DNA of 64,000 nucleotides, taken from positions 1-64,000 of IMG/VR virus record IMGVR_UViG_3300010885_076238; one strand, given 5' to 3'. Both the position numbers and the translations under genes were made by a program. Below the pieces are notes generated by a model. It did not search any database, was not told the DNA's origin, and saw only the letters and a list, made by a program, of their open reading frames with translations. Positions within the stretch are counted from its first letter, which is position 1; each line of letters starts with the position of its first letter. Below, piece after piece: positions 2-62,239 of the stretch.

Positions 2-1234
2 ACCGAGTCTAGTACAAGTACACCTACTCCAACGTTGACACTGACCAATACTCCAACCGTCACTGAATCTAGTACAAGTACACCTACTCCAACGTTGACA
101 TTGACTCCTACTGTTAATTTCAGTGATGTAGTTGAAATTATCACTACACCTACACCAACGTTAACCGAGTCTAGTACGAGTACACCAACACCAACTAATA
201 CTAATACTCTAACTTTAACAAAAGGTCCTGATTGTGATGTTTTCCTAAGGTTCACACCTACTCCAACACCAACAGAAGCTCCTAATTGTGATGTTTTCTT
301 GAGAGTGACTCCTACAAGCACTTGCACTCCAACTCTAACTCCAACTCTAACTCCTACTTTAACTGCTACTCCAACTTTTACTCCAACCCTTACTCCAACC
401 GATGTGCCTAACATTTTGACAGAACAATCAGAAAAAATATTAACAGAAAATGAAGGCTATATTTTATTAGATTTTCTAATTGGACCAAAACCAACTCGAA
501 CTCTTACTGCCACGCCAACTATTACTCCTACGAGAACTATTACTTCTACAATAACAATAACAAAAACAATAACAAAAACAATGACGCAAACATTGACCTC
601 AACTAGAACAAATACTAGTACTCCTACCCAAACTCAAACTAAAACTTCAACAAGCACTGTCACTTCGACCAGTGCCGCAACCAAAACTCCAACTCCAACT
701 AATACTAACACTCCAACTACAACAAGCACTGTTACTGCTACTAAAACCCCAACTCTAACTTCAACTCTAACTTCAACTAAAACACTAACTCCAACTCCAA
801 ATCCAACCTTAACTTCAACTAATACCTTAACTTCAACTAATACTCCAACTTTAACTTCAACTAAAACACTAACTCCAACTTTAACTAAAACTCCAACTCC
901 AACTCCAACTCCAACACTAACTCCAACTCCAACACTAACTCCAACTCCAACACTAACTCCAACTTTAACTAAAACACTAACTCCAACTTTAACTAAAACA
1001 CCAACTCCAACTTCAACTAAAACACTAACTCCAACTTCAACTAAAACACTAACTCCAACTTTAACTAAAACACTAACTCCAACAACCACGCCTGGACTAA
1101 CATTAACACCAACACCAACAATAATAAATCCTCTCAACTATAGTAGATCAAGTGTAAATAACACTTCTCATACAAATTGGGGTTTGTTAAGATCTATAAT
1201 TTCATCTAATATTAATAATTGGGGGTCTGAATGA
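2..1234 (+). CDS. Pro/Thr-rich mucin-like protein, 5'-truncated by window edge; probably virion-associated
   Basis: Frame is open from nt 2 (TESSTSTPTPT). Long TPTPTLT repeats, two PxCDVFLR motifs, and an ILTEQSEKILTE motif typical of phage structural proteins. Confidence 0.75.
   Translation, partial: TESSTSTPTPTLTLTNTPTVTESSTSTPTPTLTLTPTVNFSDVVEIITTPTPTLTESSTSTPTPTNTNTLTLTKGPDCDVFLRFTPTPTPTEAPNCDVFLRVTPTSTCTPTLTPTLTPTLTATPTFTPTLTPTDVPNILTEQSEKILTENEGYILLDFLIGPKPTRTLTATPTITPTRTITSTITITKTITKTMTQTLTSTRTNTSTPTQTQTKTSTSTVTSTSAATKTPTPTNTNTPTTTSTVTATKTPTLTSTLTSTKTLTPTPNPTLTSTNTLTSTNTPTLTSTKTLTPTLTKTPTPTPTPTLTPTPTLTPTPTLTPTLTKTLTPTLTKTPTPTSTKTLTPTSTKTLTPTLTKTLTPTTTPGLTLTPTPTIINPLNYSRSSVNNTSHTNWGLLRSIISSNINNWGSE
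640..1120 (+). repeat. Coding low-complexity tandem repeats (actccaact / TPT units)
   Basis: Dense ACTCCAACT and ACTAAAACACTA units. A 60-bp-period direct repeat also occurs at 1-100. Confidence 0.9.
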
Positions 1235-44945: not shown

Positions 44946-45012
44946 AAAACCTCCAACAAATAAACCGCAAAAATAAATAATAATAACGAGTTAATTATAT
45001 TTTATTTTACAC

Positions 45013-47867: not shown

Positions 47868-49130
47868 ATGAGCAGGAAGAAAGTTGAAGAAAAAAAGTGT
47901 GATTTTTGTGGCAAGGCCTCCAAAGAGATTGGCCCTCTGGTAGAAGGTGGGCCGGAAGGCACTGATCGCGTTTATATTTGCAGCGATTGCATTGATACCG
48001 CCGATAAGGTTATGTCTAAGAGAATTGCATCATCGCCTAGCAAGCCTAAAAAATTAAGCATTCCATCTCCAAGAGAAATTGTTTCGAAATTAGACGAATA
48101 TATTTGTGGTCAAACTGAAGCTAAAAAGAATTTGGCAGTTAGTGTTTATAATCATTACATTCGTCTTATGGATAAAGAACTGAGTAAGACCATAACGGAC
48201 AAGACCTTAGCAGAGACTCAGATTGACAAAAGCAATGTTTTGATGGTTGGTCCGACTGGATCGGGCAAAACTTTGTTGGCTTCTACTTTGGCTAAAATTT
48301 TGGAAGTTCCTTTTGCCATTGGAGATGCTACTACGGTTACGGAAGCTGGGTATGTTGGCGAGGATGTTGAGAATCTTCTTCTAAGACTCATTCGTTCTGC
48401 TGATATGGACATAGGCAGAGCAGAGATGGGAATTCTTTATATTGATGAAATTGACAAAATTGGTCGTTCTTCTGGAAATGTCTCTATAACAAGAGACGTT
48501 TCGGGAGAAGGAGTCCAGCAAGCTTTGCTAAAGATGCTTGAGGGAACCGTGTGCAATGTTCCTCCCGTCGGAGGTAGAAAGCACCCAGAGCAAGAGTTCT
48601 TGCAGGTAAATACTCAAAATATTTTGTTTATTTGCGGAGGAACTTTTGTTGGGATTGATGATATTATTAAGAAGCGTTTAGGCAAAAAGCAAATAGGTTT
48701 TGGAAGTCCCTTCGGTGATGCCTCTAAATTTCGAGGCGATTCTTGGATGGATTTCCTTCAATCCGAAGACCTAGTTGAATTCGGGATGATTCCTGAGTTT
48801 ATTGGAAGGCTTCCTGTCCAAACTTGTCTTAGAGAGCTTACTGAAGATGAATTGGTTCATGTTTTGACTGAACCAAAAAATGCTCTCCTTAAGCAGTACA
48901 AGAAACAATTTCTTTATAGCAATGTAAATTTAGAATTTACCAAAGAAGCCATAAAGGAAATTGCAAAAATGGCAATCAAAGAGAAAACAGGAGCTAGAGC
49001 TTTGAGAAGAATTGTTACTAAAATTATGAATCCCATTACTTTTGACTTGTCTGAGTTTGAAAGTAAAGATCTCATAATTGATGAGAAGATTATTAGAGGA
49101 GAAAGAGATATTTTCAAAAAAGCGGCTTAG
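47868..49130 (+). CDS. clpX: ATP-dependent Clp protease ATP-binding subunit ClpX
   Basis: Zn finger CDFCGK...[46 protein letters not shown] loop, TGARALR. Confidence 0.97.
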
Positions 49131-49391: not shown

Positions 49392-49415
49392 CTTTTATAT
49401 AAAATTGATTATACT
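49388..49415 (+). promoter_or_regulatory. Sigma70-like promoter, 16-bp spacer
   Basis: TTGACT-N16-TATACT. Confidence 0.65.
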
Positions 49416-49434
49416 AAGCCAAAGGAGGGCTTTT

Positions 49435-49722
49435 ATGAAAACTTCATCCGTTTCTGATAAACTACCCACAATATCCATTGAGGCTTTGGCCGCGATTAAA
49501 AAGGGGGTTGAAGAAAAACACTCTATTTCTAATTTGGAAAATTTAGGAGTCAAGCAAAGATTAATTAATCTACTTGAATCTCATAAAATTTCAAATTTAG
49601 AACAATTGATGTTTCATAAAAAAGAAACTTTATTATCAATCCCAAATTTTGGAAAGAGACAATTATTTGTTTTGTTTGAAGCTCTTTCTAAATATAATGA
49701 ATTAGAAAACGAGTACAAATGA
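49435..49722 (+). CDS. Stand-alone RNA polymerase alpha-subunit C-terminal-domain-like protein
   Basis: LENLGVKQRLINLLESHKISNLEQL...LLSIPNFGKRQL matches alpha-CTD ELSVRS.NCL...L....NFG.KSL; AAGGAGG SD. Confidence 0.8.
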   Translation: MKTSSVSDKLPTISIEALAAIKKGVEEKHSISNLENLGVKQRLINLLESHKISNLEQLMFHKKETLLSIPNFGKRQLFVLFEALSKYNELENEYK

Positions 49723-50780
49723 TGTTGTCGTTTTCTAATTTGGTTGCAATAGCCGCTTCTTTTTTGGCAGCTTGGGCTGTTGTTAAATATCTAATATTAA
49801 TAGAAATAAGGATTGACGAAAATTCTTACAAGGTTTTATATGATATATGTAAAAATAACAAAATCGTATTAATTGAAGAAGAATTTACTCATGAAAGAAA
49901 ATATCCAATAGTTTTTTCTGCCTTATGTTTTATAAAAGAATGTCCCGGTTTTTATATCAATCATCAAGAAAGATTAATGAGTGCTGGCTTTGAAGCAAAA
50001 GATTTCATTACCAAAGTAACCCTGTTCAGATTTAGTTATTATGATTTTAAAGAATACCTAATAAAATCTCATAAGAATTGCGTAAATGTTCCGATTGATT
50101 TGTTGTTTCCTTATGGATCTGACAAGATCGGAAGCATAAAGAGCAAAGAATTGAATCCAATCATACTCAATGAAATATGTTTGGATTTTGAAAAAGAAAT
50201 AGGAGATAAAGTAAAAACAAGTGCTTTATTCTATGGCAACCCAGGTAATGGGAAAACTTATTTTATTAAATATTTGGCCACAAAATACAATTTGCCAATA
50301 AAGATGATTACTTTTTCTCCTGATTTTACCAATCATGATTTATTGATGCTTTTTTCTCAGATCCCATCTGATTGCATTGTTTTGTTGGAAGATTTTGATA
50401 ATTACTTCGACAAAAGAAAATGCATTATTGGCGACGACAATAAAAATATTAAATTTACATTCGACATTATCTTGAATGCTTTTGACGGTGTTTACAACAC
50501 CTATGAAAATGTCATTTTTATAATGACCGTTAATGATATTTCTAAAGTAGATGATGCTCTGAAGAACAGACCCGGTCGATTCAAATATGTTTTGGAATTT
50601 CCAAATCCAAGTGTAGAAATTATTGAAAAATTAGTTGATAATAAAGATTTTGCAAAAAGAATGGTTGGAATGAATCTAGATCAGGTTCTTACTGTTAAAA
50701 AATATCTTACAGCAGGAGTTGACTTTGAAGATTCATTAAAACGAATCAATTATCAAAAGGAAGTAGCTCCCATCGGCTAA
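49719..50780 (+). CDS. BCS1-like AAA ATPase with N-terminal TM helix
   Basis: FYGNPGNGKT, LLEDFD, FIMTVN, ALKNRPGRF. Confidence 0.8.
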   Translation: MMLSFSNLVAIAASFLAAWAVVKYLILIEIRIDENSYKVLYDICKNNKIVLIEEEFTHERKYPIVFSALCFIKECPGFYINHQERLMSAGFEAKDFITKVTLFRFSYYDFKEYLIKSHKNCVNVPIDLLFPYGSDKIGSIKSKELNPIILNEICLDFEKEIGDKVKTSALFYGNPGNGKTYFIKYLATKYNLPIKMITFSPDFTNHDLLMLFSQIPSDCIVLLEDFDNYFDKRKCIIGDDNKNIKFTFDIILNAFDGVYNTYENVIFIMTVNDISKVDDALKNRPGRFKYVLEFPNPSVEIIEKLVDNKDFAKRMVGMNLDQVLTVKKYLTAGVDFEDSLKRINYQKEVAPIG

Positions 50781-54475: not shown

Positions 54476-54503
54476 TTGACAGAAAAAAAATATTTAGTAT
54501 AAT
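54476..54503 (+). promoter_or_regulatory. Sigma70 consensus promoter, 16-bp spacer
   Basis: TTGACA-N16-TATAAT. Confidence 0.75.
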
Positions 54504-54838: not shown

Positions 54839-54989
54839 ATAGAGTCATGTGAATGATTTACTCAGTCGTTGAGTAAGTTATTTCAAATCAAATTAAATTT
54901 TTTAGGTCAAAAAATCGTCTAAAATATTAATTACTAAGACTCGTTATCCAAGTGTGTCCAACATAATTCCGAAAACAAGGAGAGAAGTT

Positions 54990-56024
54990 ATGGCTAAGAA
55001 GATTGATATTGTGAAGAAGTCTGAAACCAAGCCCGAAGCAGCATCTAAGTCTGATGCCGCTCATTCCATTCCTATGGGTGGGGATCGTGAAGCTCCTCGC
55101 AAGCATAGTAAGGTTGTGGATCGCTTTAGGACGAAGGTGAAGCCTTCTACTAAGGAGGTCAAGGCTGACGCTCGTCCAGTCATCGATATTGATGACGAGA
55201 CGAAGGAAAAGTTTGTAGAATTCGCTGCTACCAAGGAACTTTTTGACATTTTTGAGGCCAGCAAAAAGAGTCAGACGGCAGATATTTATGGGGCCATTTT
55301 TGAAAAGTATAAGGATACTTTGTGGCGTTCCAAGACTCAGCCTAAGAATCCTTCTATCAAGGTTCAAAATTTGGATGGAAGTCTTGAAGCCGAAGGTCAG
55401 TTTATTGTTCAAGTTGGAACTAGAATTAAGATTAATATGCCAGAGGTTCCAGAAGATGAGTTGCCGGAAGATGTCCTTCTTAAGGCGCTTGTCGATCTTG
55501 GCGTAAAGAAGAGCAATGCGGCTCGTATTATTGAAGATGAGGTTTCATTCGTTCCTCAGTGGAGTCTTAACTTCACAGATATGCTCAATGGCGTGATGGT
55601 TGAAGGAAAGTTGCAGCCTGCAACAGACCCTCAGATTTCTGCTTCCGAGCTTCTTTTTCAGGTTATAAATGGTCAGGATGAAGATGGAATTGAATTAAAT
55701 TCTAAGTCTCGTCTTGATATGTTGAAAAAGATTTCGGAAGAAGGTTGGGTATTGATCAAGCAGAATGTGGAAAGTCATACCAAATACTTTCCGCAGCTTG
55801 TTGACGGTGCGGATTTTCTTGATAGAGTTTGCAATTACGCAGAATCTAAGGATGAATTGGATTCTATTCTGACAGTTTTCTGCCCTGTGCATTTCTGTCA
55901 GAGAGTCAAGTTTGCTTGTAGTGACGCTCCTGCCGATAAGACCGCAAGGCTTTTGTCGGAAGCAGAAGCTACTATTACCGGCAAGCCGAATGATGATGAA
56001 GTTGAAAGAGCTTATAAAAAGTGA
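54990..56024 (+). CDS. Hypothetical protein with Lys-rich N-terminus and host-like codon usage
   Basis: AAGGAG SD before ATG 54990; AAG/GCT/CGT-rich codons. Confidence 0.8.
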   Translation: MAKKIDIVKKSETKPEAASKSDAAHSIPMGGDREAPRKHSKVVDRFRTKVKPSTKEVKADARPVIDIDDETKEKFVEFAATKELFDIFEASKKSQTADIYGAIFEKYKDTLWRSKTQPKNPSIKVQNLDGSLEAEGQFIVQVGTRIKINMPEVPEDELPEDVLLKALVDLGVKKSNAARIIEDEVSFVPQWSLNFTDMLNGVMVEGKLQPATDPQISASELLFQVINGQDEDGIELNSKSRLDMLKKISEEGWVLIKQNVESHTKYFPQLVDGADFLDRVCNYAESKDELDSILTVFCPVHFCQRVKFACSDAPADKTARLLSEAEATITGKPNDDEVERAYKK

Positions 56025-56040
56025 AAATTAGGAGTGCGTG

Positions 56041-56358
56041 ATGAGAAAAAAGTCTAGAACCGATATTATCAGAGAACACTTGCTTTCTGCAAAATCATTT
56101 GAACAAAGCCCAAATGCTGTTGTTCAGGATTTGAAGAAAAAGGGAGTTGATGTTACTGTTCATCATGTTGGAATGGTGAAACTCTCTATTAGAGGCAAAA
56201 GAGTTTTGAAGAGAATCGGTAATAGAAGTGGTCGTAGCGGTAGAACTAAGAAAAATTCTGGATTATTTATTGCCAAAGATCTTTTGAAATCTTGTAATAA
56301 TAATCTCGATTTGGCTTTGCAAAATTTGAAAGTTGTTGCCAAGCTAATGAATGATTAG
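56041..56358 (+). CDS. Planctomycete-type small DNA-binding protein (paralog)
   Basis: SRTDIIREHL...PNAVVQDLKKKGVDVT; C-terminal LFIAKDLLK...LALQNL. Confidence 0.7.
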   Translation: MRKKSRTDIIREHLLSAKSFEQSPNAVVQDLKKKGVDVTVHHVGMVKLSIRGKRVLKRIGNRSGRSGRTKKNSGLFIAKDLLKSCNNNLDLALQNLKVVAKLMND

Positions 56359-56410
56359 GCGTTGTGTGTCGCAATGCTATTGTTTCTAAAATGCCAAAGG
56401 AGAAAATTTT

Positions 56411-56770
56411 ATGGCTGAAAAGGAAGTGGTTAATCGGTCTCAGGCGATTCGTGAATATTTGAATTCGGTGAAGCCGTCTGATCGTGGCCCTAGGGCTGTT
56501 AGCGAAGCTTTGAAGGCTAAGGGTCTTAGCGTTAGCCCACAGCTTGTCTCCCAGGTTAAAACTTCTTTGAATAAGAAAACTTCTTCAAAGAAGAAGGGTC
56601 GAGTTTATGATTCTTCTTTTTCAAAGAAGATTAAGAAGTCTCGTCCAGATTGGTTTCAATTGGAAAGTGTTGACACTTTGATTAGTGCCAAGAATCTTCT
56701 TAAGTCTGTTGGTGGAGATTTGAATGCTGCAAAAAAGAATTTAGAAATCATTTCTAAGCTCTTGTCGTAA
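56411..56770 (+). CDS. Planctomycete-type small DNA-binding protein (paralog)
   Basis: VNRSQAIREYL...GPRAVSEALKAKGLSVSPQLVSQVK; LISAKNLLKSVGG. Confidence 0.75.
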   Translation: MAEKEVVNRSQAIREYLNSVKPSDRGPRAVSEALKAKGLSVSPQLVSQVKTSLNKKTSSKKKGRVYDSSFSKKIKKSRPDWFQLESVDTLISAKNLLKSVGGDLNAAKKNLEIISKLLS

Positions 56771-56775
56771 GCAGG

Positions 56776-56830
56776 AAAAGAGAGTAGAATTCCCGTCTGA
56801 GATACGGCGGGAGTTCTATTTCTCTTTTTA
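56776..56830 (+). terminator. Long intrinsic terminator hairpin
   Basis: AAAAGAGAGTAGAATTCCCGTC/GGCGGGAGTTCTATTTTCTCTTTT. Confidence 0.85.
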
Positions 56831-56841
56831 AAAGGATTTTT

Positions 56842-57192
56842 ATGAAAATTGACAAATCTTTAATCTTAATTGCTGTATTTTCAATTGTATCTTGGGAGAT
56901 ATTTTGTTATCAAAATAATCAAATCAAAGTATTGAAAGAATTTGTTGAAATAAATAAAAAATCTCAAGAAATTAACGAAGATGAAATTAGAGATTTAATT
57001 TGTGCAGTTCAAGAAGAAAAAAACAAAAATGAGGGAATTGCTACTCGCAACTATGTCGCTGGAATTTTGGATGGAGTGAATAAAAAAGACTACTACGCCG
57101 AGGTTTGGCATAAAGGATTCGATAGTGGCATTCAAAATAAAATTTTAATAGGAGAATCTGAAAAGGCATATGTTGTGAATAAAGGCGAATAA
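56842..57192 (+). CDS. Hypothetical protein with N-terminal TM anchor
   Basis: LILIAVFSIVSWEIF followed by a coiled region; AAGGA SD. Confidence 0.7.
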   Translation: MKIDKSLILIAVFSIVSWEIFCYQNNQIKVLKEFVEINKKSQEINEDEIRDLICAVQEEKNKNEGIATRNYVAGILDGVNKKDYYAEVWHKGFDSGIQNKILIGESEKAYVVNKGE

Positions 57193-57198
57193 AAATTA

Positions 57199-57356
57199 AT
57201 TTAAGGTGTTATGGATTGGATTGGGATTGCCCACAATCAAAGATAGTGCTTTGATTGAGCAATAACTTAAGCGAGCATAGTTGGTCACTCCAATGATTTT
57301 TGGGAAAGTGAGCGTTGTCGCGTCTCAAAAATAGCACCAATCCATAACCCTTAAAT
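57199..57356 (+). ncRNA. Unclassified structured RNA candidate
   Basis: 20-bp closing stem (57199-57219 with 57337-57356), second stem with G-U pairs, 9-bp hairpin 57234-57257, hairpin 57285-57311. Confidence 0.45.
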
Positions 57357-58046
57357 AAATTTAGGCTTTCTTTTAATTATGCTTGTTGTATCATCAAATA
57401 ATAAAAGATCGTCAATTGATCCTATTAATCCATCTGCTAAGATTTGAATCATTTCATCATTTTCTCTTAATTCTTTGACAATTTCAATTTGCATAGAATG
57501 GACATGGTTGTTAGGATACCATATTCTAAATAATTGATTCATATTGTTTTTCGAACGCCCAGAATATTTTCCTCTTTTTTTTCCTTCATAAACACCGAAC
57601 GATTCGTTTTCTAAAAAATAACAAAAAGCATCTTTTATACGAAGATCACAAGTATATGAAGAAGGATTTCCTTCTCCGTAACCTATAATTAAGTCTAAGT
57701 TTTGATCGGCAACTTCATTTTTTACGCTATTACTGCATCCATGTAAATAAAAAATATAAACTCTGTTGTCTATTTTTTTTAGAATTCTAGCTGTCATTCT
57801 TAGAATTTGTTCTAAAAATTCTTCTTTTATAACATCTTCGTGAACATGACCAACATGATTGCAGTCTGCTTCATCTGCAAAATAATTAAATTTTTTATTT
57901 CTTTTCCATCCTCTGTTTATAACGGCAAAAGCTCCCATCTCAGAGGCAACAGTGTCCGCAATCAAGGCGGTATTTGTATCGTCTAGACCATGGGGAGCAA
58001 CCAAAATTACCGGGATGTCTCCATTTATCAGACTTACTCTTTCCAT
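57351..58046 (-). CDS. N-formylglutamate amidohydrolase / poly-gamma-glutamate-hydrolase-like Zn hydrolase
   Basis: PVILVAPHG, FYLHG, SMQIEI; AAGGAG SD. Confidence 0.6.
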   Translation of the reverse strand: MERVSLINGDIPVILVAPHGLDDTNTALIADTVASEMGAFAVINRGWKRNKKFNYFADEADCNHVGHVHEDVIKEEFLEQILRMTARILKKIDNRVYIFYLHGCSNSVKNEVADQNLDLIIGYGEGNPSSYTCDLRIKDAFCYFLENESFGVYEGKKRGKYSGRSKNNMNQLFRIWYPNNHVHSMQIEIVKELRENDEMIQILADGLIGSIDDLLLFDDTTSIIKRKPKFI

Positions 58047-58184
58047 AAAATTTACTCCTTATTTTTCAATATTATAGTTGTTTTATAAATTTAAAAATAC
58101 TTTAAACAAACTTTAATTTATTGTGCATAAATTTTTTTTATTCTCGACCGTTATGTCGATAGACACCTGTACAAGGAGATAAAA

Positions 58185-59198
58185 ATGATGATTCCATATG
58201 TTCCAATAAACGAAAATCGTCGAGAAGAACTTCAAATTGATCTTTCGAATTGTAATAAAACCTTAAAAAAGTATTACAAACAAGTTGCTCATCGAAAAGG
58301 AAGCAGGGGATTTGTAACTAGCAACAACGAAAGTATTAATAGACCCAAATATTACAAACAAATATTGGGTGCGTATAGAAGTTGTCCCACGGCAGATATT
58401 AATTTGCACGGAGTCTTAATTCCAAATTGTGATGTTAGGGCAATAGTTTTTCTTGAAGATATTAGATGGGAAATTCTAACATCTATTTCGGGAATGCTCA
58501 CTGGGCTTGCCAATAAGAAAAACAAAAGCAAGAGTCTTTGTGATTCTGCGTTATCTTTTGAGGATTTGGAAAGTGAAGCTTTCAAGTCTGCCCTTTCCTC
58601 TATTCACTCTTACGCAAAAGAAAAGATTTGTTTTTCTACATATTTTTATGTTTGTGCAAACAGACACATCAGCAGCTTGTGCAGTAGATCTAATTCTATG
58701 TCTAAACTTAGCAAAAAATCAATTAAACTAAAAAGAAGATACATAGAAGTTCAAAAGTCTTTAGGAAGAAACTCTAATTTTGAAGAAGTTGTTGAACTTA
58801 TGAATTTGAAAGAAAATGAAATTGAACTTCTCCGATCTACATTGAATTGTTTCGTTTCTCATCACGATGAAAAAACTACAATGAGTAAGCATTACGCTGG
58901 AGTTGATGGGGCGAAACATTATTCTTCCTCTGGGAAAAGGGGTGGGGATTTGATTTTATCTTCAAATAATACTTTTGTAGAATCGTTAGATGATAAAGAG
59001 ATTGGAGGCATGAATCTCACCGATTTGGAAAAAGCTGTCTTAGAAGGATTTATGCAATCTTCTAGCAAACTAGGAATAAACTCCGTTGCTAAGAATGTTG
59101 TCAATCCTAAGACTGGCAAGCCTTTTTCAAGGATGGCTGTGACTTATGCTTGGAGAAGGGTAAAAGAGAAAATCAATAACTTCAGGAAAGTTGCCTAA
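58185..59198 (+). CDS. Divergent sigma70-family RNA polymerase sigma factor
   Basis: Region 2 (FEDLESEAF...Y..EKICFSTY...NRHI), region 3 (QKSLGRNSNFEEVVELMNL), region 4 (LTDLEKAVL...INSVAK...SRMAVTYAWRRVKEKI); AAGGAG SD. Confidence 0.75.
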   Translation: MMIPYVPINENRREELQIDLSNCNKTLKKYYKQVAHRKGSRGFVTSNNESINRPKYYKQILGAYRSCPTADINLHGVLIPNCDVRAIVFLEDIRWEILTSISGMLTGLANKKNKSKSLCDSALSFEDLESEAFKSALSSIHSYAKEKICFSTYFYVCANRHISSLCSRSNSMSKLSKKSIKLKRRYIEVQKSLGRNSNFEEVVELMNLKENEIELLRSTLNCFVSHHDEKTTMSKHYAGVDGAKHYSSSGKRGGDLILSSNNTFVESLDDKEIGGMNLTDLEKAVLEGFMQSSSKLGINSVAKNVVNPKTGKPFSRMAVTYAWRRVKEKINNFRKVA

Positions 59199-59204
59199 TA
59201 CATC

Positions 59205-60329
59205 ATGCAGAAACATCTTAATTTTTTGGTTCCGAGTTTAGACGCTAGAAGAAATTTTATTCAATCTGGCCAGTGTAATTTGAATTCTTTCATTGGAAAT
59301 GAGGAGGCAATAAGGCGCCTTTCTAGAGCGGTTTTTTCTGCCATTGGAAAAGAAGACCACTGCTGTTCGGACTATTCTTTTGCTTTGTGCGGGCCACCAT
59401 CTACCGGCAAGACTTATCTTGCAAAACTATTTGCCAAGACATTGTCTATACCTTTTGTTGTTATCGAACCGCAGACAGTGAAAAAAGTTGATGATATTTT
59501 CTTTGAAACCCAAAAGGCAATTACCGAGCATTATCAAAAGCTTGGACTAAACTTTGAATTATTTGACTTTGGCGACAAAGTTTATTGTCCTCCTCCTTGT
59601 GTTGTTTTTATCGATGAGGTTCACAATCTAAAATCAAATGTTGTTCAAGGTTTATTGAAGGCGACAGAGCCAAACGATAGACTTATGATTACTGAAGAAG
59701 GAAGTACGATTCATACAAATAATATCTGTTGGGTGATAGCAACCACAGATAGAGGCGATTTGTTCGATGCTTTTGATACAAGATTTCAAAAAGTATTTCT
59801 AAGACTGTATTCCAAGAAAGAAATTTCTAAAATTATCAACTCCAACAACCCAGATTGGAGCGAGGAGATTTGCGATATTGTTTCAAACTATAATTCACAA
59901 GTTCCAAGAGAAGCTATTGCTTTTGCAAAAGACATGAGGGTTGAACAAGAAATGAATCCAAGAGATTGGAAATTCGTTGCTCAATCTGTTGCAAGGGATC
60001 ACGGAATTGATGAATTTGGAATGAGCCAAATAAGAGTTGATATTCTTAAAGCATTGGGTCAATCTCCAATGTCTGCATCGCAACTTCCATTTGTTGCACA
60101 TGTAAAAGAAGATGAACTTAGAAAGTATATTATGCCCCCACTTCTCTCTAGAACCCCAGATCAAGCGATTCCCATGGTTACAGTCTCGACCAAAGGGTAT
60201 ACAATAACCATTGCTGGAATTGACGAGCTAAATAAGAGAGGGATTAGAAACAGGGGTTTAGAGGCTATTCCAGAAAGCGTTAGACATTCTTTCGTAAAAG
60301 AAGAAGAAAAGGAGATTTCTTATGCCTGA
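59205..60329 (+). CDS. RuvB-like AAA+ ATPase
   Basis: FIGNE, CGPPSTGKT, FIDEVHNL, IATT.RG...TRF, VPR sensor 2, GIDEFG, C-terminal winged helix. Confidence 0.85.
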   Translation: MQKHLNFLVPSLDARRNFIQSGQCNLNSFIGNEEAIRRLSRAVFSAIGKEDHCCSDYSFALCGPPSTGKTYLAKLFAKTLSIPFVVIEPQTVKKVDDIFFETQKAITEHYQKLGLNFELFDFGDKVYCPPPCVVFIDEVHNLKSNVVQGLLKATEPNDRLMITEEGSTIHTNNICWVIATTDRGDLFDAFDTRFQKVFLRLYSKKEISKIINSNNPDWSEEICDIVSNYNSQVPREAIAFAKDMRVEQEMNPRDWKFVAQSVARDHGIDEFGMSQIRVDILKALGQSPMSASQLPFVAHVKEDELRKYIMPPLLSRTPDQAIPMVTVSTKGYTITIAGIDELNKRGIRNRGLEAIPESVRHSFVKEEEKEISYA

Positions 60330-61066: not shown

Positions 61067-61267
61067 ATGAAGGATCATGTTCGTGACTATTCGCCTAGTC
61101 AGGAAGAAATTGAGCAGGCTTGCTTAGAGATAAGAAAAAAATGGTCTGAAGCTGAGTTTTTTAAACGAGCAAACATAAAGAAGCAAGATTATCATGTTCC
61201 ATTTTGTGATATAAGCAACTCATGCAGTGAATTTGAAGCAGAGAAAAACATCTATAGATTAGGATAA
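61067..61267 (+). CDS. Small protein with planctomycete-like PSQEEIEQACLEIRKKWS motif
   Basis: TAGGAG SD before ATG 61067. Confidence 0.65.
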   Translation: MKDHVRDYSPSQEEIEQACLEIRKKWSEAEFFKRANIKKQDYHVPFCDISNSCSEFEAEKNIYRLG

Positions 61268-61330
61268 AATTTTATTTAAGGTGGAACGTTATGGATTAGC
61301 ATAGATGAATTTTTTCCTGCGAGATTCCAC

Positions 61331-62239
61331 ATGAAATTCGGCGTTTGTTGTATAGTTCTTGATTTAGAAAATAATGATTCGCCTAAAAAGTTTCAAAAAA
61401 TAACTTACAAAAGATTTTCTTCTCTTCCTAGAGAAGAGGCAGTCGGAATTCTAAGTCAAAGAATATTAAATAATATTGACGTTACTTTTCACGCAATCAA
61501 GTATTGTGCGGAAAGAAATTACTGTTACAGGCTTTCTAGCGATTTGTTTCCTCTAATAACTTATGATAAAGCTAACGTAACTTTAGAAGAACTACCAGAT
61601 TATTCTAAAATAGAGAATTTGTTTTCTCAAATTAAAGAATATATTTGTGCAAGTAATACTAGAATTTCTTGTCATCCTAGTGAATATAATGTTCTTGCTT
61701 CTAAAAACCAAGAAGCGGTAAACAAAACTATAAAAGAATTAAATTTCTATAGTTGGTTCATGGATCAAATCGGATGTCCAGCCAATTATAATTCACCTAT
61801 GAATCTTCATATTCACAATAACGATGGTGATCCTTCGGAGATCATCGATAGATTTATAAAGAATTGCGAAGGTCTTGATGAAAATTGTTGGAACAGACTT
61901 GTTATTGAAAATGATGATAAAATTAATTGTTGGAGCGTGAATAAATTAATTAAATATTATCATTCTGCTACAAATAAGCCAATAACTCTTGATTATCTTC
62001 ATCACAAGTGTCATCCTGATAATCTTAGCGAAAAAGACGCTGTAGCCGCTTGTTGCAACACTTGGGGTGAATACAAGCCTTTATTTCACTACTCAGAAAG
62101 CAAAGAAGGCAAAAATCCACGCGCCCACGCAGATTATGCCATTAATAAATTTGACAACTACGGATTTGATTTTGATATTGACTTTGAATTGAAAATGAAA
62201 GACCAAGCCATAGCAAAATATTTGCAAGAAGTAGCATGA
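61331..62239 (+). CDS. uvsE: UV damage endonuclease
   Basis: YRLSSDLFP, RISCHPSEYNVLAS, LVIENDD, LDYLHH, HYSES, AHADY, ELKMKD. Confidence 0.93.
   Translation: MKFGVCCIVLDLENNDSPKKFQKITYKRFSSLPREEAVGILSQRILNNIDVTFHAIKYCAERNYCYRLSSDLFPLITYDKANVTLEELPDYSKIENLFSQIKEYICASNTRISCHPSEYNVLASKNQEAVNKTIKELNFYSWFMDQIGCPANYNSPMNLHIHNNDGDPSEIIDRFIKNCEGLDENCWNRLVIENDDKINCWSVNKLIKYYHSATNKPITLDYLHHKCHPDNLSEKDAVAACCNTWGEYKPLFHYSESKEGKNPRAHADYAINKFDNYGFDFDIDFELKMKDQAIAKYLQEVA

What the first reader, a model, noticed from the sequence alone, without database searches (positions are those of the whole stretch)
58185..59198. Phage-encoded divergent sigma factor with a rewired region-4 recognition helix
Seen: regions 2, 3 and 4 are recognisable. 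Region 4 has an NPKTGKPF insertion in the HTH and SRMAVTYAW in place of the TRERIRQIE-type -35 helix. There is also a ~90-aa N-terminal extension. Inference: it recognises non-canonical promoters, probably for middle/late genes.
Basis: partly seen in the sequence, partly recalled or inferred. Interest (0 to 1): 0.68.

Follow-up and report, generated by a model that had tools for sequence, protein, structure and literature searches.

The report
Jumbo-phage sigma factor with odd region 4
This gene encodes a divergent but complete sigma factor of a 204-kb freshwater jumbo phage that has no RNA polymerase of its own, and it probably steers the host polymerase to about 80 phage promoters of an unusual type that I found in the same genome.

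Summary
It is a sigma-70-family protein. Region 2 is found by HMMs, at borderline scores. The N-terminal 170 residues superpose on RpoS sigma1.2+sigma2 (Z 12.4). The C-terminal 66 residues fold like sigma4, with sigma4 domains filling the top structural matches (Z 6.8), but no sigma4 HMM matches. A complex model puts helix 2.2 on the beta' clamp helices (0.81, control 0.00).

The "N-terminal extension" is region 1.2 plus a ~45-residue insertion. The loop INPxTxKPY[ST]RM in the region-4 helix-turn-helix is conserved across a family seen only on jumbo or huge phage contigs.

The phage has one sigma and no detected RNAP. It carries 83 copies of AAA-N17-CGTTAT (about 3 expected), all between 42 and 167 kb. 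These sit in front of replication and repair genes, small ORFs and the sigma gene itself. Their geometry matches sigma28 promoters, and the start codons lie 10-12 nt (leaderless) or 22-28 nt downstream.

Assigning this regulon to the sigma is an inference (about 0.55). The regulon looks middle or replication-class, not late. Verdict: a new variant of a known kind, of moderate interest.

The parts
58185..59198 (+). Sigma-factor gene, 337 aa
   Evidence: ORF. Sigma70_r2, PHROG 351 and TIGR02937/FliA HMM matches. Full-length fold matches to sigmaA, sigmaS and sigma70 chains.
58212..58286 (+). Region 1.2 helix (residues 10-34)
   Evidence: Model residues 4..169 superpose on the RpoS sigma1.2+sigma2 fragment 5h6x_B: Z 12.4, rmsd 2.2 A, 94 of 96 residues.
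58287..58424 (+). Insertion of ~45 residues (35-80) between regions 1.2 and 2.1: two beta-hairpins and one helix. This is the position of the non-conserved region of primary sigmas.
   Evidence: AF2 model, pLDDT 85-95. It is not aligned to the RpoS fragment. Residues 51-61 touch the beta' clamp helices in the complex model.
58425..58694 (+). Region 2 (residues 81-170). Helix 2.2 (125-142) carries the invariant residues D127, L128 and E131. Helix 2.3/2.4 carries the FSTY motif.
   Evidence: Pfam Sigma70_r2 at residues 116-166. Invariant columns. Predicted interface with E. coli beta' 267-298: score 0.81, best control 0.00.
58713..58847 (+). Region 3 (residues 177-221, three helices)
   Evidence: The FliA/WhiG and PHROG 351 alignments reach residue 222. 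Superposes on sigma70 101-501 and sigmaB 30-212.
58851..59003 (+). Linker (residues 223-273). Low confidence in the model and variable in length across the family. This is the position of the region 3.2 linker.
   Evidence: pLDDT 27-36. Insertions and deletions in alignment A1.
59004..59195 (+). Region 4 (residues 274-337): a helix-turn-helix with an enlarged turn
   Evidence: Domain model. VIA-align top rows are sigma4 domains, Z 6.4-6.8. No HMM match.
59091..59129 (+). Enlarged turn of the helix-turn-helix (residues 303-315), containing NPKTGKPF (307-314)
   Evidence: A loop with a beta-bridge between helices 298-302 and 316-336. N307, P308, T310, P313, R316 and M317 are invariant in 25 sequences. 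The loop is kept in distant huge-phage relatives.
58128..58154 (+). Phage-type promoter in front of the sigma gene: TAAAT, 16 nt, then CGTTAT (58149-58154). The Shine-Dalgarno sequence AAGGAG is at 58173-58178.
   Evidence: Sequence. Member of the AAA-N17-CGTTAT class.
54921..54947 (+). Promoter of the same class. The GTG start of the 356-aa gene lies 12 nt after the C, which predicts a leaderless transcript.
   Evidence: The orthologous site in relative L004 reads TGTTAT.
61266..61292 (+). Promoter of the same class, upstream of the UvdE gene (61331-62239)
   Evidence: UvdE assignment by Pfam, 4.4e-38.
44983..45009 (-). Promoter of the same class, on the minus strand
54476..54503 (+). Perfect canonical sigma70-type promoter (TTGACA, 16 nt, TATAAT), in tandem with the phage-type promoter at 54921-54947
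   Evidence: It is one of three perfect sites in the genome. Of 18 sites matching at least 11 of 12 positions, 9 are intergenic, while only 11% of the genome is intergenic.
59205..60329 (+). AAA+ ATPase (374 aa), RuvB-like or clamp-loader-like. It always lies directly after the sigma gene in relatives.
   Evidence: Pfam AAA 1.1e-13, NCBIfam RuvB 1e-15, PHROG clamp loader 6.8e-14. Synteny holds in 11 of 13 loci, even where other genes have moved.

Best explanation
The gene encodes a functional sigma-70-family factor with a group-3-like layout: region 1.2, a ~45-residue insertion, regions 2 and 3, a linker, and region 4. It has no region 1.1. The phage is a freshwater jumbo phage that has no detected RNA polymerase of its own.

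The sigma binds the host core enzyme through helix 2.2 on the beta' clamp helices. It then most likely directs the core to the phage's own promoter class, AAAAT(A/T)(A/T)T, 13 nt, (T)CGTTAT.

In this reading, CGTTAT is the -10-like element, read by regions 2.4 and 3.0. The A-rich element about 20 bp upstream is read by region 4, whose helix-turn-helix has an enlarged proline-containing turn. Transcription starts about 12 nt after the C. This yields leaderless mRNAs, or mRNAs that begin at the Shine-Dalgarno sequence.

The regulon is the 42-167 kb block: replication, repair and nucleotide genes, many small ORFs, and probable tRNA genes. It includes the sigma gene itself, which would give positive autoregulation after a first burst from host-type promoters.

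Shown here: sigma identity by sequence and by fold; the existence, number, strand bias and geometry of the promoter class. Inferred: core binding, which rests only on an in-silico model, and the pairing of this sigma with this promoter class.
For: Sigma identity: HMMs; full-length fold; RpoS sigma1.2+sigma2 Z 12.4; sigma4 fold.

Core binding. The score is 0.81 against a best control of 0.00. That mark was reached by 51 of 78 solved complexes and 2 of 108 mismatched pairs. The runs share at least 82% of their contacts, and the partner's pLDDT is at least 76. The interface is sigma 121-141 with beta' 267-298, the canonical region 2.2/clamp-helix contact, and it includes the invariant D127, L128 and E131.

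Only sigma, no RNAP: there is one Sigma70_r2 match in the 204 kb and no beta' match, with 14 of 14 control genomes positive.

Promoter class:
- CGTTAT occurs in 38 upstream regions against 4.7 expected.
- Among 58 intergenic sites, AAA at -20..-18 is present in 58 of 58 and T at -17 in 57 of 58.
- AAA-N17-CGTTAT occurs 77 times on the + strand and 6 times on the - strand. The reversed control gives 3 and 3. Markov simulations give a mean of 2.8 and a maximum of 6.
- The spacing is rigid: N14 to N16 give only 1-3 sites on the + strand.
- Start codons lie at +10..12 in 26 sites and at +22..28, with AGGAG between, in about 26 sites.

A group-1 sigma is unlikely to read these promoters. They lack A at the -11 position: it is T in 58 of 58 sites. 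Canonical TTGACA/TATAAT promoters also exist in the same genome as a separate class.

The geometry equals that of the sigma28 promoter in the P. aeruginosa open complex: -36 TCTAAAG -30 and -15 GCCGATAA -8 (PMC12784957). Host sigma28, however, needs A-11.

Orthologous promoters keep their place in relative L004. Other clades carry their own motifs upstream of sigma, AAA+ and the 356-aa gene, with the same 21-nt offset.
Against: No experiment or expression data are available. No RNA run holds this DNA.

The sigma gene is itself preceded by a CGTTAT promoter. This fits a cascade in which another factor reads CGTTAT and this sigma reads a later class just as well as it fits autoregulation.

The region-4 helix ([ST]RMA.[ST][YL]AW[KRV]RV) is nearly the same in clades whose upstream promoter halves differ: AAAATAAT, TAAAAAA and TCCTGAWWT. 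This argues against simple base read-out by that helix.

Region 4 has no HMM support, and its fold Z of 6.8 is only middling for a small helical domain.

The pass may reflect likeness to solved sigma/beta' complexes, and E. coli is not the host.

The record is 88% complete, so a second sigma or a polymerase could lie in the missing part. The T7-type RNAP search had no positive control.
Confidence: 0.55

Rival explanations
1. It is a true sigma factor, but for a later class. The CGTTAT promoters would be read by something else, such as a host alternative sigma or host holoenzyme altered by other phage proteins. They would drive middle genes, including this sigma gene. The sigma would then switch on the late or structural block (1-42 kb and 167-204 kb), as in the SPO1 and T4 cascades.
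For: The sigma gene has a CGTTAT promoter and no strong host-type promoter of its own; the best candidate is TTTACT, 16 nt, TATAGT, matching 9 of 12 positions. The CGTTAT class is absent from the blocks that hold the tail-fibre-like genes. Region 4 is conserved across clades while the upstream promoter half varies.
Against: I found no conserved motif upstream of genes in the other blocks, only generic AT-rich words, and TATAAATA is not enriched there. No other phage sigma or RNAP was found that could read the 83 CGTTAT sites. CGTTAT fits neither a primary sigma, which needs A-11, nor sigma28's CGATAA.
Confidence: 0.27
2. It is a sigma-like core-binding protein that does not itself recognise promoters. 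It would act as a decoy that displaces the host sigma to shut off host transcription, or as a scaffold whose conserved region-4 loop binds a protein partner rather than DNA.
For: No sigma4 HMM match. The region-4 loop is invariant across clades of different G+C content and different promoter motifs. There is a weak, recurrent likeness of the loop to SBDS domain II, which is not a promoter-binding domain. The predicted core contact is strong.
Against: All four DNA-facing sigma modules are kept, including the FSTY melting motif in region 2.3 and a basic last helix with invariant R316 and K327. The top fold matches are DNA-bound sigma4 domains. The genome carries a promoter class that needs some alternative sigma.
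Confidence: 0.08
3. The sigma works only together with the AAA+ ATPase encoded immediately downstream. This would be an ATP-driven step in open-complex formation or in sigma loading.
For: Sigma is followed directly by the AAA+ gene in 11 of 13 related loci, including loci where the 356-aa and 119-aa genes have moved to the other side. The pair is also kept, with one gene inserted between, in the 595-kb phage LR756511.1. The gap between the two genes is 6 nt here, and they overlap by 1 nt in L004 and L007.
Against: Gene order is generally conserved in related phages. The ATPase looks RuvB-like and lies in a repair and ligase neighbourhood (UvdE, RNA and DNA ligases), so a recombination role explains it. 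L017 and L018 have the sigma without the ATPase within 10 kb. No interaction test was run.
Confidence: 0.1

Closest known systems
Group 3 alternative sigma factors (FliA/sigma28, SigF, SigH)
   Same: The domain order is 1.2, 2, 3, 4 without region 1.1. These are the best HMM and PDB sequence matches (FliA/WhiG 2e-4, SigH 3mzy 4.5e-5, SigF 1l0o). The region-4 fold matches SigF, SigH and sigma28. The candidate promoter has sigma28 geometry: AAA lies 20 nt before a CG-led -10 element.
   Different: Scores are far below the family cut-offs: 21 bits against 189.6 for FliA/WhiG. hhalign against E. coli FliA gives a probability of 2.4%. This protein has a ~45-residue insertion between regions 1.2 and 2.1 and an enlarged proline-rich turn in the helix-turn-helix. 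The -10-like element has T where sigma28 flips out A-11.
Phage-encoded sigma factors of large phages that use the host RNAP: Bacillus phage SigF/G-like sigmas, and the 'complete' sigmas of group 2 jumbo phages (Iyer et al. 2021, PMC7824862)
   Same: The strategy is the same: no phage RNAP, and a phage sigma to redirect the host core. The best BFVD fold match is the sigma-B/F/G-type factor of Bacillus phage Deep Blue.
   Different: There is no detectable sequence match to any GenBank phage (tblastn). The family is known only from metagenomic jumbo or huge phage contigs. It has its own region-4 loop signature and an N-terminal insertion.
T4 gp55 with gp33 and the sliding clamp (late transcription)
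   Same: A phage sigma that reprograms host RNAP. There is a possible link to a clamp-loader-like AAA+ ATPase encoded next door.
   Different: gp55 has only a region-2-like domain and needs gp33 in place of region 4, and T4 late promoters are a single TATAAATA box. This protein has regions 3 and 4, the candidate promoter is bipartite, and TATAAATA is not enriched.
Primary sigma factors (group 1)
   Same: Region 1.2 is followed by an insertion at the site of the non-conserved region. The full-length fold alignment covers sigmaA and sigma70 from region 1.2 to region 4.
   Different: There is no region 1.1. The positions of the two region-2.3 tryptophans hold V and C. The candidate -10 element lacks A-11.

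Membership tests
Sigma-70 family | Region 2 (Pfam Sigma70_r2) detectable by HMM | tested here: met
   Borderline. The protein scores 23.2 bits against a cut-off of 24. The six-frame scan scores 24.9 bits, over the cut-off. 18 of 25 relatives match. The family profile hits SigH 3mzy at 4.5e-5.
Sigma-70 family | Fold of sigma1.2+sigma2 | tested here: met
   RpoS fragment 5h6x_B: Z 12.4, rmsd 2.2 A, 94 of 96 residues. 201 chains reach Z of 8 or more, and the rows listed are sigma factor chains.
Sigma-70 family | Helix 2.2 binds the beta' clamp helices of core RNAP | tested here: met
   In silico only. The score is 0.81 against a best control of 0.00. That mark was reached by 51 of 78 solved complexes and 2 of 108 mismatched pairs. 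Contacts agree in at least 82%, and the partner's pLDDT is at least 76. The interface is sigma 121-141 with beta' 267-298. The pass may come from likeness to solved complexes, and it does not show binding.
Sigma-70 family | Region 3 | tested here: inconclusive
   No Pfam Sigma70_r3 hit. The FliA/WhiG and PHROG 351 alignments extend over residues 177-222. Three helices superpose on sigma3 of sigma70 and sigmaB chains.
Sigma-70 family | Region 4 detectable by HMM (Sigma70_r4 / r4_2) | tested here: not met
   No hit at E up to 1. The genome-wide PF04545 scan hits another ORF, not this one. The C-terminal profile against PDB finds nothing significant. hhalign against FliA aligns only the 4.1 helix, E 0.32.
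Sigma-70 family | Region 4 fold (four-helix helix-turn-helix domain) | tested here: met
   Sigma4 domains lead the VIA-align rows and fill most of the top 30: SigF Z 6.8, SigH 6.7, SigD 6.6, CnrH 6.6, sigmaE region 4 on DNA 6.5, sigma28 6.4. They align 54-57 of 66 residues at 1.9-2.4 A. The Z values are middling, and LuxR-type helix-turn-helix domains score alike.
Sigma-70 family | Promoter-specific initiation with core RNAP | not testable with these tools
   Needs in vitro transcription or 5'-end mapping. No RNA run holds the locus.
FliA/sigma28 subfamily | Score over the family cut-off | tested here: not met
   TIGR02479 scores 21 bits against 189.6. hhalign against E. coli FliA gives probability 2.4%, E 0.019.
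FliA/sigma28 subfamily | Promoter TAAA-N15-GCCGATAA with A-11 | tested here: not met
   The spacing is the same, but the element is CGTTAT, with T in 58 of 58 sites at the A-11 position and no GC before it.
ECF (group 4) sigma factors | Only regions 2 and 4; score over the TIGR02937 cut-off | tested here: not met
   22.3 bits against 42.9. Region 1.2, region 3 and a long linker are present.
T4 gp55-type late sigma | A region-2-like domain only, without region 4 | tested here: not met
   A sigma4-like C-terminal domain is present. No gp55 HMM was run.

The most novel reading that the evidence does not exclude
A sigma-70-family factor that forms an obligate pair with a dedicated AAA+ ATPase, the RuvB-like or clamp-loader-like gene that follows it in nearly all relatives. 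Promoter opening or sigma loading on a sigma70-type holoenzyme would then need ATP hydrolysis. So far that is known only for sigma54 with its enhancer-binding proteins and, indirectly, for T4 gp55 with the clamp and clamp loader.
Probability: 0.1. Interest if true: 0.85.

Novelty: new variant of a known kind. Interest (0 to 1): 0.5.

Why it matters
Phage sigma factors are the classic way for large phages without their own polymerase to take over host transcription, so the kind is known.

Three things are new here. First, this is a separate sigma family confined to uncultured freshwater jumbo and huge phages. It escapes the region-4 models because of a conserved enlarged turn in the helix-turn-helix, and it has an insertion at the site of the non-conserved region of primary sigmas.

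Second, there is a concrete and testable candidate regulon: about 80 rigidly spaced promoters with sigma28-like geometry, a T at the position of the flipped-out A, and a predicted start that makes about a third of the site-linked transcripts (26 of 83 sites) leaderless.

Third, this gives a ready in vitro system (one protein, one 27-bp promoter) for asking how region 2 can accept a non-A base at -11, and what an enlarged region-4 turn does. It would also improve annotation of temporal classes in jumbo phage metagenomes. Orthogonal sigma/promoter pairs of this kind are also useful parts for synthetic circuits.

Tried and rejected
- tblastn of the sigma, and megablast of 12 kb, against 50,697 GenBank phage records found no match.
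- Membership in the recently described 'moraphage' lineage (PMC12619734) was rejected. The genome has no HSP70 and no glutamine synthetase.
- Sequence tests for region 4 gave nothing significant: the profile of the C-terminal domain against PDB, Foldseek with the domain model (best E 1.3), and hhalign against E. coli FliA. Only the exhaustive structural search placed the domain.
- Searching the relatives' loci for the identical AAA-N17-CGTTAT motif found none. Each clade has its own variant.
- The whole records of the closer relatives could not be searched, because they are not held. A genome-wide covariation test of sigma against promoter was therefore not possible.
- IMG/VR holds only two distant relatives.
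- A word search with one mismatch for a late-promoter motif in the 1-42 kb and 167-204 kb blocks found only AT-rich words. TATAAATA is not enriched.
- The T7-type RNAP search found nothing, but its control rang nowhere, so it says little.
- Expression: no RNA run holds the locus.
- The large representative-protein search was not run. The operators flagged its cost, and no claim here rests on an absence of relatives.
- PHROG scans of ten large ORFs outside the window did not find the capsid, portal or terminase genes, so the 'late' block is defined only by tail-fibre-like and baseplate-like matches at 1-6 kb.
- No other genetic code was needed.
Full report
OBSERVATION. The window is the first 64 kb of a 204,311-bp linear IMG/VR virus record that CheckV rates 88% complete. 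Its G+C content is about 30%. The ORF 58185..59198 (+) is exactly as stated and gives 337 aa. NPKTGKPF is residues 307-314, and SRMAVTYAW is residues 315-323.

IS IT A SIGMA FACTOR? By sequence, only region 2 and part of region 3 are visible.
- Pfam Sigma70_r2 scores 23.2 bits as a protein (cut-off 24, E 6e-5, residues 116-166) and 24.9 bits in the six-frame genome scan.
- PHROG 351 'RNA polymerase sigma factor' matches at 1.3e-7 over residues 92-222.
- NCBIfam sigma70-ECF matches at 7.9e-5 and FliA/WhiG at 2e-4 over residues 98-222. Both are far below their cut-offs.

The word search found 24 relatives of 32-58% identity. All come from metagenomes, several from contigs of 120-490 kb, and two are named sigma factor by JGI. 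Their alignment (A1) shows invariant D127, L128 and E131 in helix 2.2, the FSTY motif of region 2.3, and an almost invariant C-terminus. The family profile hits SigH (3mzy, 4.5e-5), another sigma (8b3z) and SigF (1l0o) in the PDB.

The AlphaFold2 model built from this alignment has a mean pLDDT of 76. Foldseek matches full-length sigmaA chains (E 6e-5) and phage sigma factors in BFVD. With VIA-align, model residues 4-169 superpose on the RpoS fragment 'region 1.2 + region 2' (5h6x_B): Z 12.4, rmsd 2.2 A, 94 of 96 residues. Many sigma70, sigmaS and sigmaB chains align from region 1.2 to region 4.

REGION 4. No HMM sees it. Foldseek with the domain model is blank, and hhalign against E. coli FliA aligns only the 4.1 helix.

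The domain model covers residues 272-337 and has a pLDDT of 79. It was compared with 48,161 PDB representatives. The top rows are almost all sigma4 domains: SigF Z 6.8 (rmsd 2.2 A, 54 aa), SigH 6.7, SigD 6.6, CnrH 6.6, sigmaE region 4 on -35 DNA 6.5 and sigma28 6.4. LuxR-type helix-turn-helix domains are interspersed among them. These Z values are middling for a small helical domain. The argument rests on the enrichment for sigma4 and on the domain's position at the end of a sigma.

In the model a short helix (298-302) is followed by a 13-residue loop with a beta-bridge (303-315), and then by the long last helix (316-336). The loop signature I-N-P-x-T-x-K-P-[YF]-[ST]-R-M is kept in every clade. 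That includes relatives of 21-27% identity in phages of 340, 533 and 595 kb.

MAFFT against FliA region 4 anchors A322 on the A of 'AIKRLR' and opens a gap of only three residues. The 'insertion' is thus partly a remodelling of the helix ends by two prolines. I could not settle which register is right.

CORE BINDING. A complex model of residues 1-175 with E. coli beta' 255-320 scored 0.81 (runs 0.79, 0.81, 0.82) against a best control of 0.00. That mark was reached by 51 of 78 solved complexes and 2 of 108 mismatched pairs. The runs agree in at least 82% of contacts, and the partner's pLDDT is at least 76. The interface is sigma 121-141 (helix 2.2), plus residues 51-61 and 91-98, with beta' 267-298, which are the clamp helices. 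This shows likeness to the canonical sigma-core contact. It does not show that this protein binds, and E. coli is not the host.

WHAT WOULD IT READ? The record has one Sigma70_r2 match and no beta' match, with 14 of 14 control genomes positive. It has no T7-type RNAP match either, but that control was empty.

I called ORFs on the whole genome and looked for words enriched in upstream intergenic DNA. CGTTAT stands out: 38 upstream regions against 4.7 expected. The aligned sites give a bipartite motif. AAA sits at -20..-18 in 58 of 58 sites and T at -17 in 57 of 58, followed by AAT(A/T)(A/T)T, then (T)CGTTAT at 0..5.

- AAA-N17-CGTTAT occurs 77 times on the + strand and 6 times on the - strand. 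The reversed control gives 3 and 3. Markov simulations give a mean of 2.8 and a maximum of 6.
- The spacing is rigid: N14 to N16 give 1-3 sites on the + strand.
- The first start codon of an ORF of 40 aa or more lies 10-12 nt after the C in 26 sites with no Shine-Dalgarno sequence. It lies 22-28 nt after it in about 26 sites, with AGGAG starting near +12.
- Both patterns point to a transcript start about 12 nt after the C. That makes CGTTAT the -10-like element, puts the A-rich element near -33 to -26, and makes about a third of the site-linked transcripts (26 of 83 sites) leaderless.

The geometry equals that of the sigma28 promoter in the P. aeruginosa open complex, -36 TCTAAAG -30 and -15 GCCGATAA -8 with A-11 flipped out (PMC12784957). 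In both cases the first A of AAA lies 20 nt before the C of CG. The phage element, however, has T at the A-11 position in all 58 sites.

Canonical TTGACA/TATAAT promoters also exist as a separate, smaller class. Of 18 sites matching at least 11 of 12 positions, 9 are intergenic against an intergenic fraction of 11%. Three sites are perfect, one of them at 54476-54503. Relatives have them too. So the host appears to use ordinary primary promoters. The CGTTAT class needs another specificity factor, and the phage's only sigma is the obvious candidate.

WHICH GENES? All sites lie between 42 and 167 kb. None lies among the 54 ORFs of 1-42 kb or the 57 ORFs of 167-204 kb. The genes behind them include DNA ligase, DNA helicase, an HNH-type protein and an ATPase. 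They also include UvdE (61287), the 356-aa gene at 54954, many small ORFs at 148-166 kb, and what look like tRNA genes near 131 kb.

The sigma gene itself has such a site: TAAAT, 16 nt, CGTTAT at 58149-58154, with AAGGAG at 58173-58178. The tail-fibre-like and baseplate-like genes at 1-6 kb have none. If this is the sigma's regulon, it is a middle or replication class with autoregulation, not a late class.

The same facts also fit the rival reading: another factor reads CGTTAT, the sigma is a middle gene, and it switches on late genes whose promoter I could not define. I weight the two readings at about 0.55 and 0.27. CGTTAT fits neither a primary sigma nor sigma28, and nothing else in the genome could read it.

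RELATIVES. Gene order around the sigma is conserved. The order is the 356-aa gene, one or two ~110-aa paralogues, a 231-aa gene on the other strand, the sigma, and then directly a ~370-aa AAA+ ATPase. The ATPase matches Pfam AAA at 1e-13, RuvB at 1e-15 and PHROG clamp loader at 7e-14.

The sigma-ATPase pair stays together in 11 of 13 loci, even where the 356-aa module has moved downstream. In the 595-kb phage LR756511.1 it is kept with a SpoU-like gene in between. The sigma is much less conserved (27-57% identity) than its neighbours (AAA+ 59-71%, the 231-aa gene 55-78%).

Orthologous promoters keep their place but change letters. L004 has TGTTAT or TGTTAA. The L024/25/27/28 clade has TAAAAAA...YGGTAWT in front of sigma, the AAA+ gene and a third gene. 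The L021/22 clade has TCCTGAWWT...CGGTWW. All keep the same 21-nt offset. This looks like a fast-evolving sigma-promoter system. However, the region-4 helix barely changes between these clades. That argues against simple read-out of the upstream half by that helix. The sample is a few sites per clade, because the whole records could not be searched.

COMPARISON AND NOVELTY. Jumbo phages without an RNAP that encode 'complete' sigma factors are a described category (PMC7824862). This protein works like a group-3 sigma, but it fails the FliA, ECF and gp55 membership tests.

It belongs to a family seen so far only on uncultured jumbo or huge phage contigs. No GenBank phage matches it. The family has two structural peculiarities and a well-defined candidate regulon. 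I rate it a new variant of a known kind, with interest 0.5.

The most novel reading that the evidence does not exclude is functional coupling to the neighbouring AAA+ ATPase. I put its probability at about 0.1.

LIMITS. No expression data exist for this DNA. The host is unknown. It is a freshwater organism that uses Shine-Dalgarno sequences and canonical promoters. The genome is incomplete. My ORF calls are mechanical. The structural genes outside 1-6 kb were not identified.

Noticed in passing
window 49405-49722 (+): A small ORF (105 aa) with an RNA polymerase alpha C-terminal domain: PF03118, 26.8 bits against a cut-off of 23.8. It lies between a ClpX-like gene (47868-49130) and another AAA+ gene (49719-50780). 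The same trio occurs in relatives L007 and L020 and in the P0021 contig. A free-standing phage alpha-CTD could bind A/T-rich promoter DNA or mimic the host alpha subunit.
   Followed up: partly
window 59205-60329 (+), and loci L004, L006, L007, L020-L028: An AAA+ ATPase (RuvB-like or clamp-loader-like, with a possible C-terminal winged helix) always lies directly downstream of the sigma gene. It is 59-71% identical across clades in which the sigma is only 27-57% identical.
   Followed up: partly
window 54954-58046: A conserved module travels with the sigma. It comprises a 356-aa protein with no family match, two paralogous ~110-aa proteins (56038-56358 and 56411-56770, with weak hits to small DNA-binding domains), and a 231-aa gene on the minus strand (57351-58046, with a weak FGase-like hit). 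In some clades the 356-aa and 119-aa genes lie after the AAA+ gene instead of before the sigma.
   Followed up: partly
G000 genome 122523-157665 (outside the window; loci L012-L014): Eight + strand copies of the 16-mer AACACCTGATGTTTAT lie at gene ends, several of them 30-50 nt upstream of CGTTAT promoters. A partial copy (ACACCTG) lies in the leader of the sigma gene at 58163. Its function is unknown. It could be a regulator site, a processing site or a homing-endonuclease target.
   Followed up: partly
G000 genome 148-166 kb (locus L014): A dense array of small ORFs, each with its own CGTTAT promoter. Many are leaderless and begin with the same few codons (ATGGC[CA]GCGATTGAGAC), which suggests a paralogous family of small proteins.
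   Followed up: no
window 298-335 of the protein (nt 59076-59189): The region-4 loop and helix give a weak but recurrent match to Pfam SBDS_domain_II: 20 of 25 family members, best E 8.4e-5, below the cut-off. The shared motif is NP-x-T-[KR]-[KR]-P-Y-[ST]. This is probably convergence on a similar helix-loop-helix.
   Followed up: partly
window 7149-34628: A large block of sugar-modifying genes: UDP-galactopyranose mutase (52% identical to prophage and bacterial copies), a Nol-like carbamoyltransferase, and many ~250-300-aa ORFs. None has a CGTTAT promoter. The divergent intergenic regions at about 11.2 kb and 13.4 kb contain an inverted repeat, TACATA..TATGTA.
   Followed up: no
window 56782-56821 (+): A strong terminator-like hairpin (16 pairs plus a T-run) lies after the second small paralogue. 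A similar hairpin sits at the same place in L004 and L007.
   Followed up: no
G000 76742-76816 (+), locus L003: A second, weak Sigma70_r4-type helix-turn-helix (16.7 bits, below the cut-off) lies in a 244-aa open frame. The contig that encodes P0021 has a 298-aa Sigma70_r4 protein directly upstream of its sigma gene.
   Followed up: no
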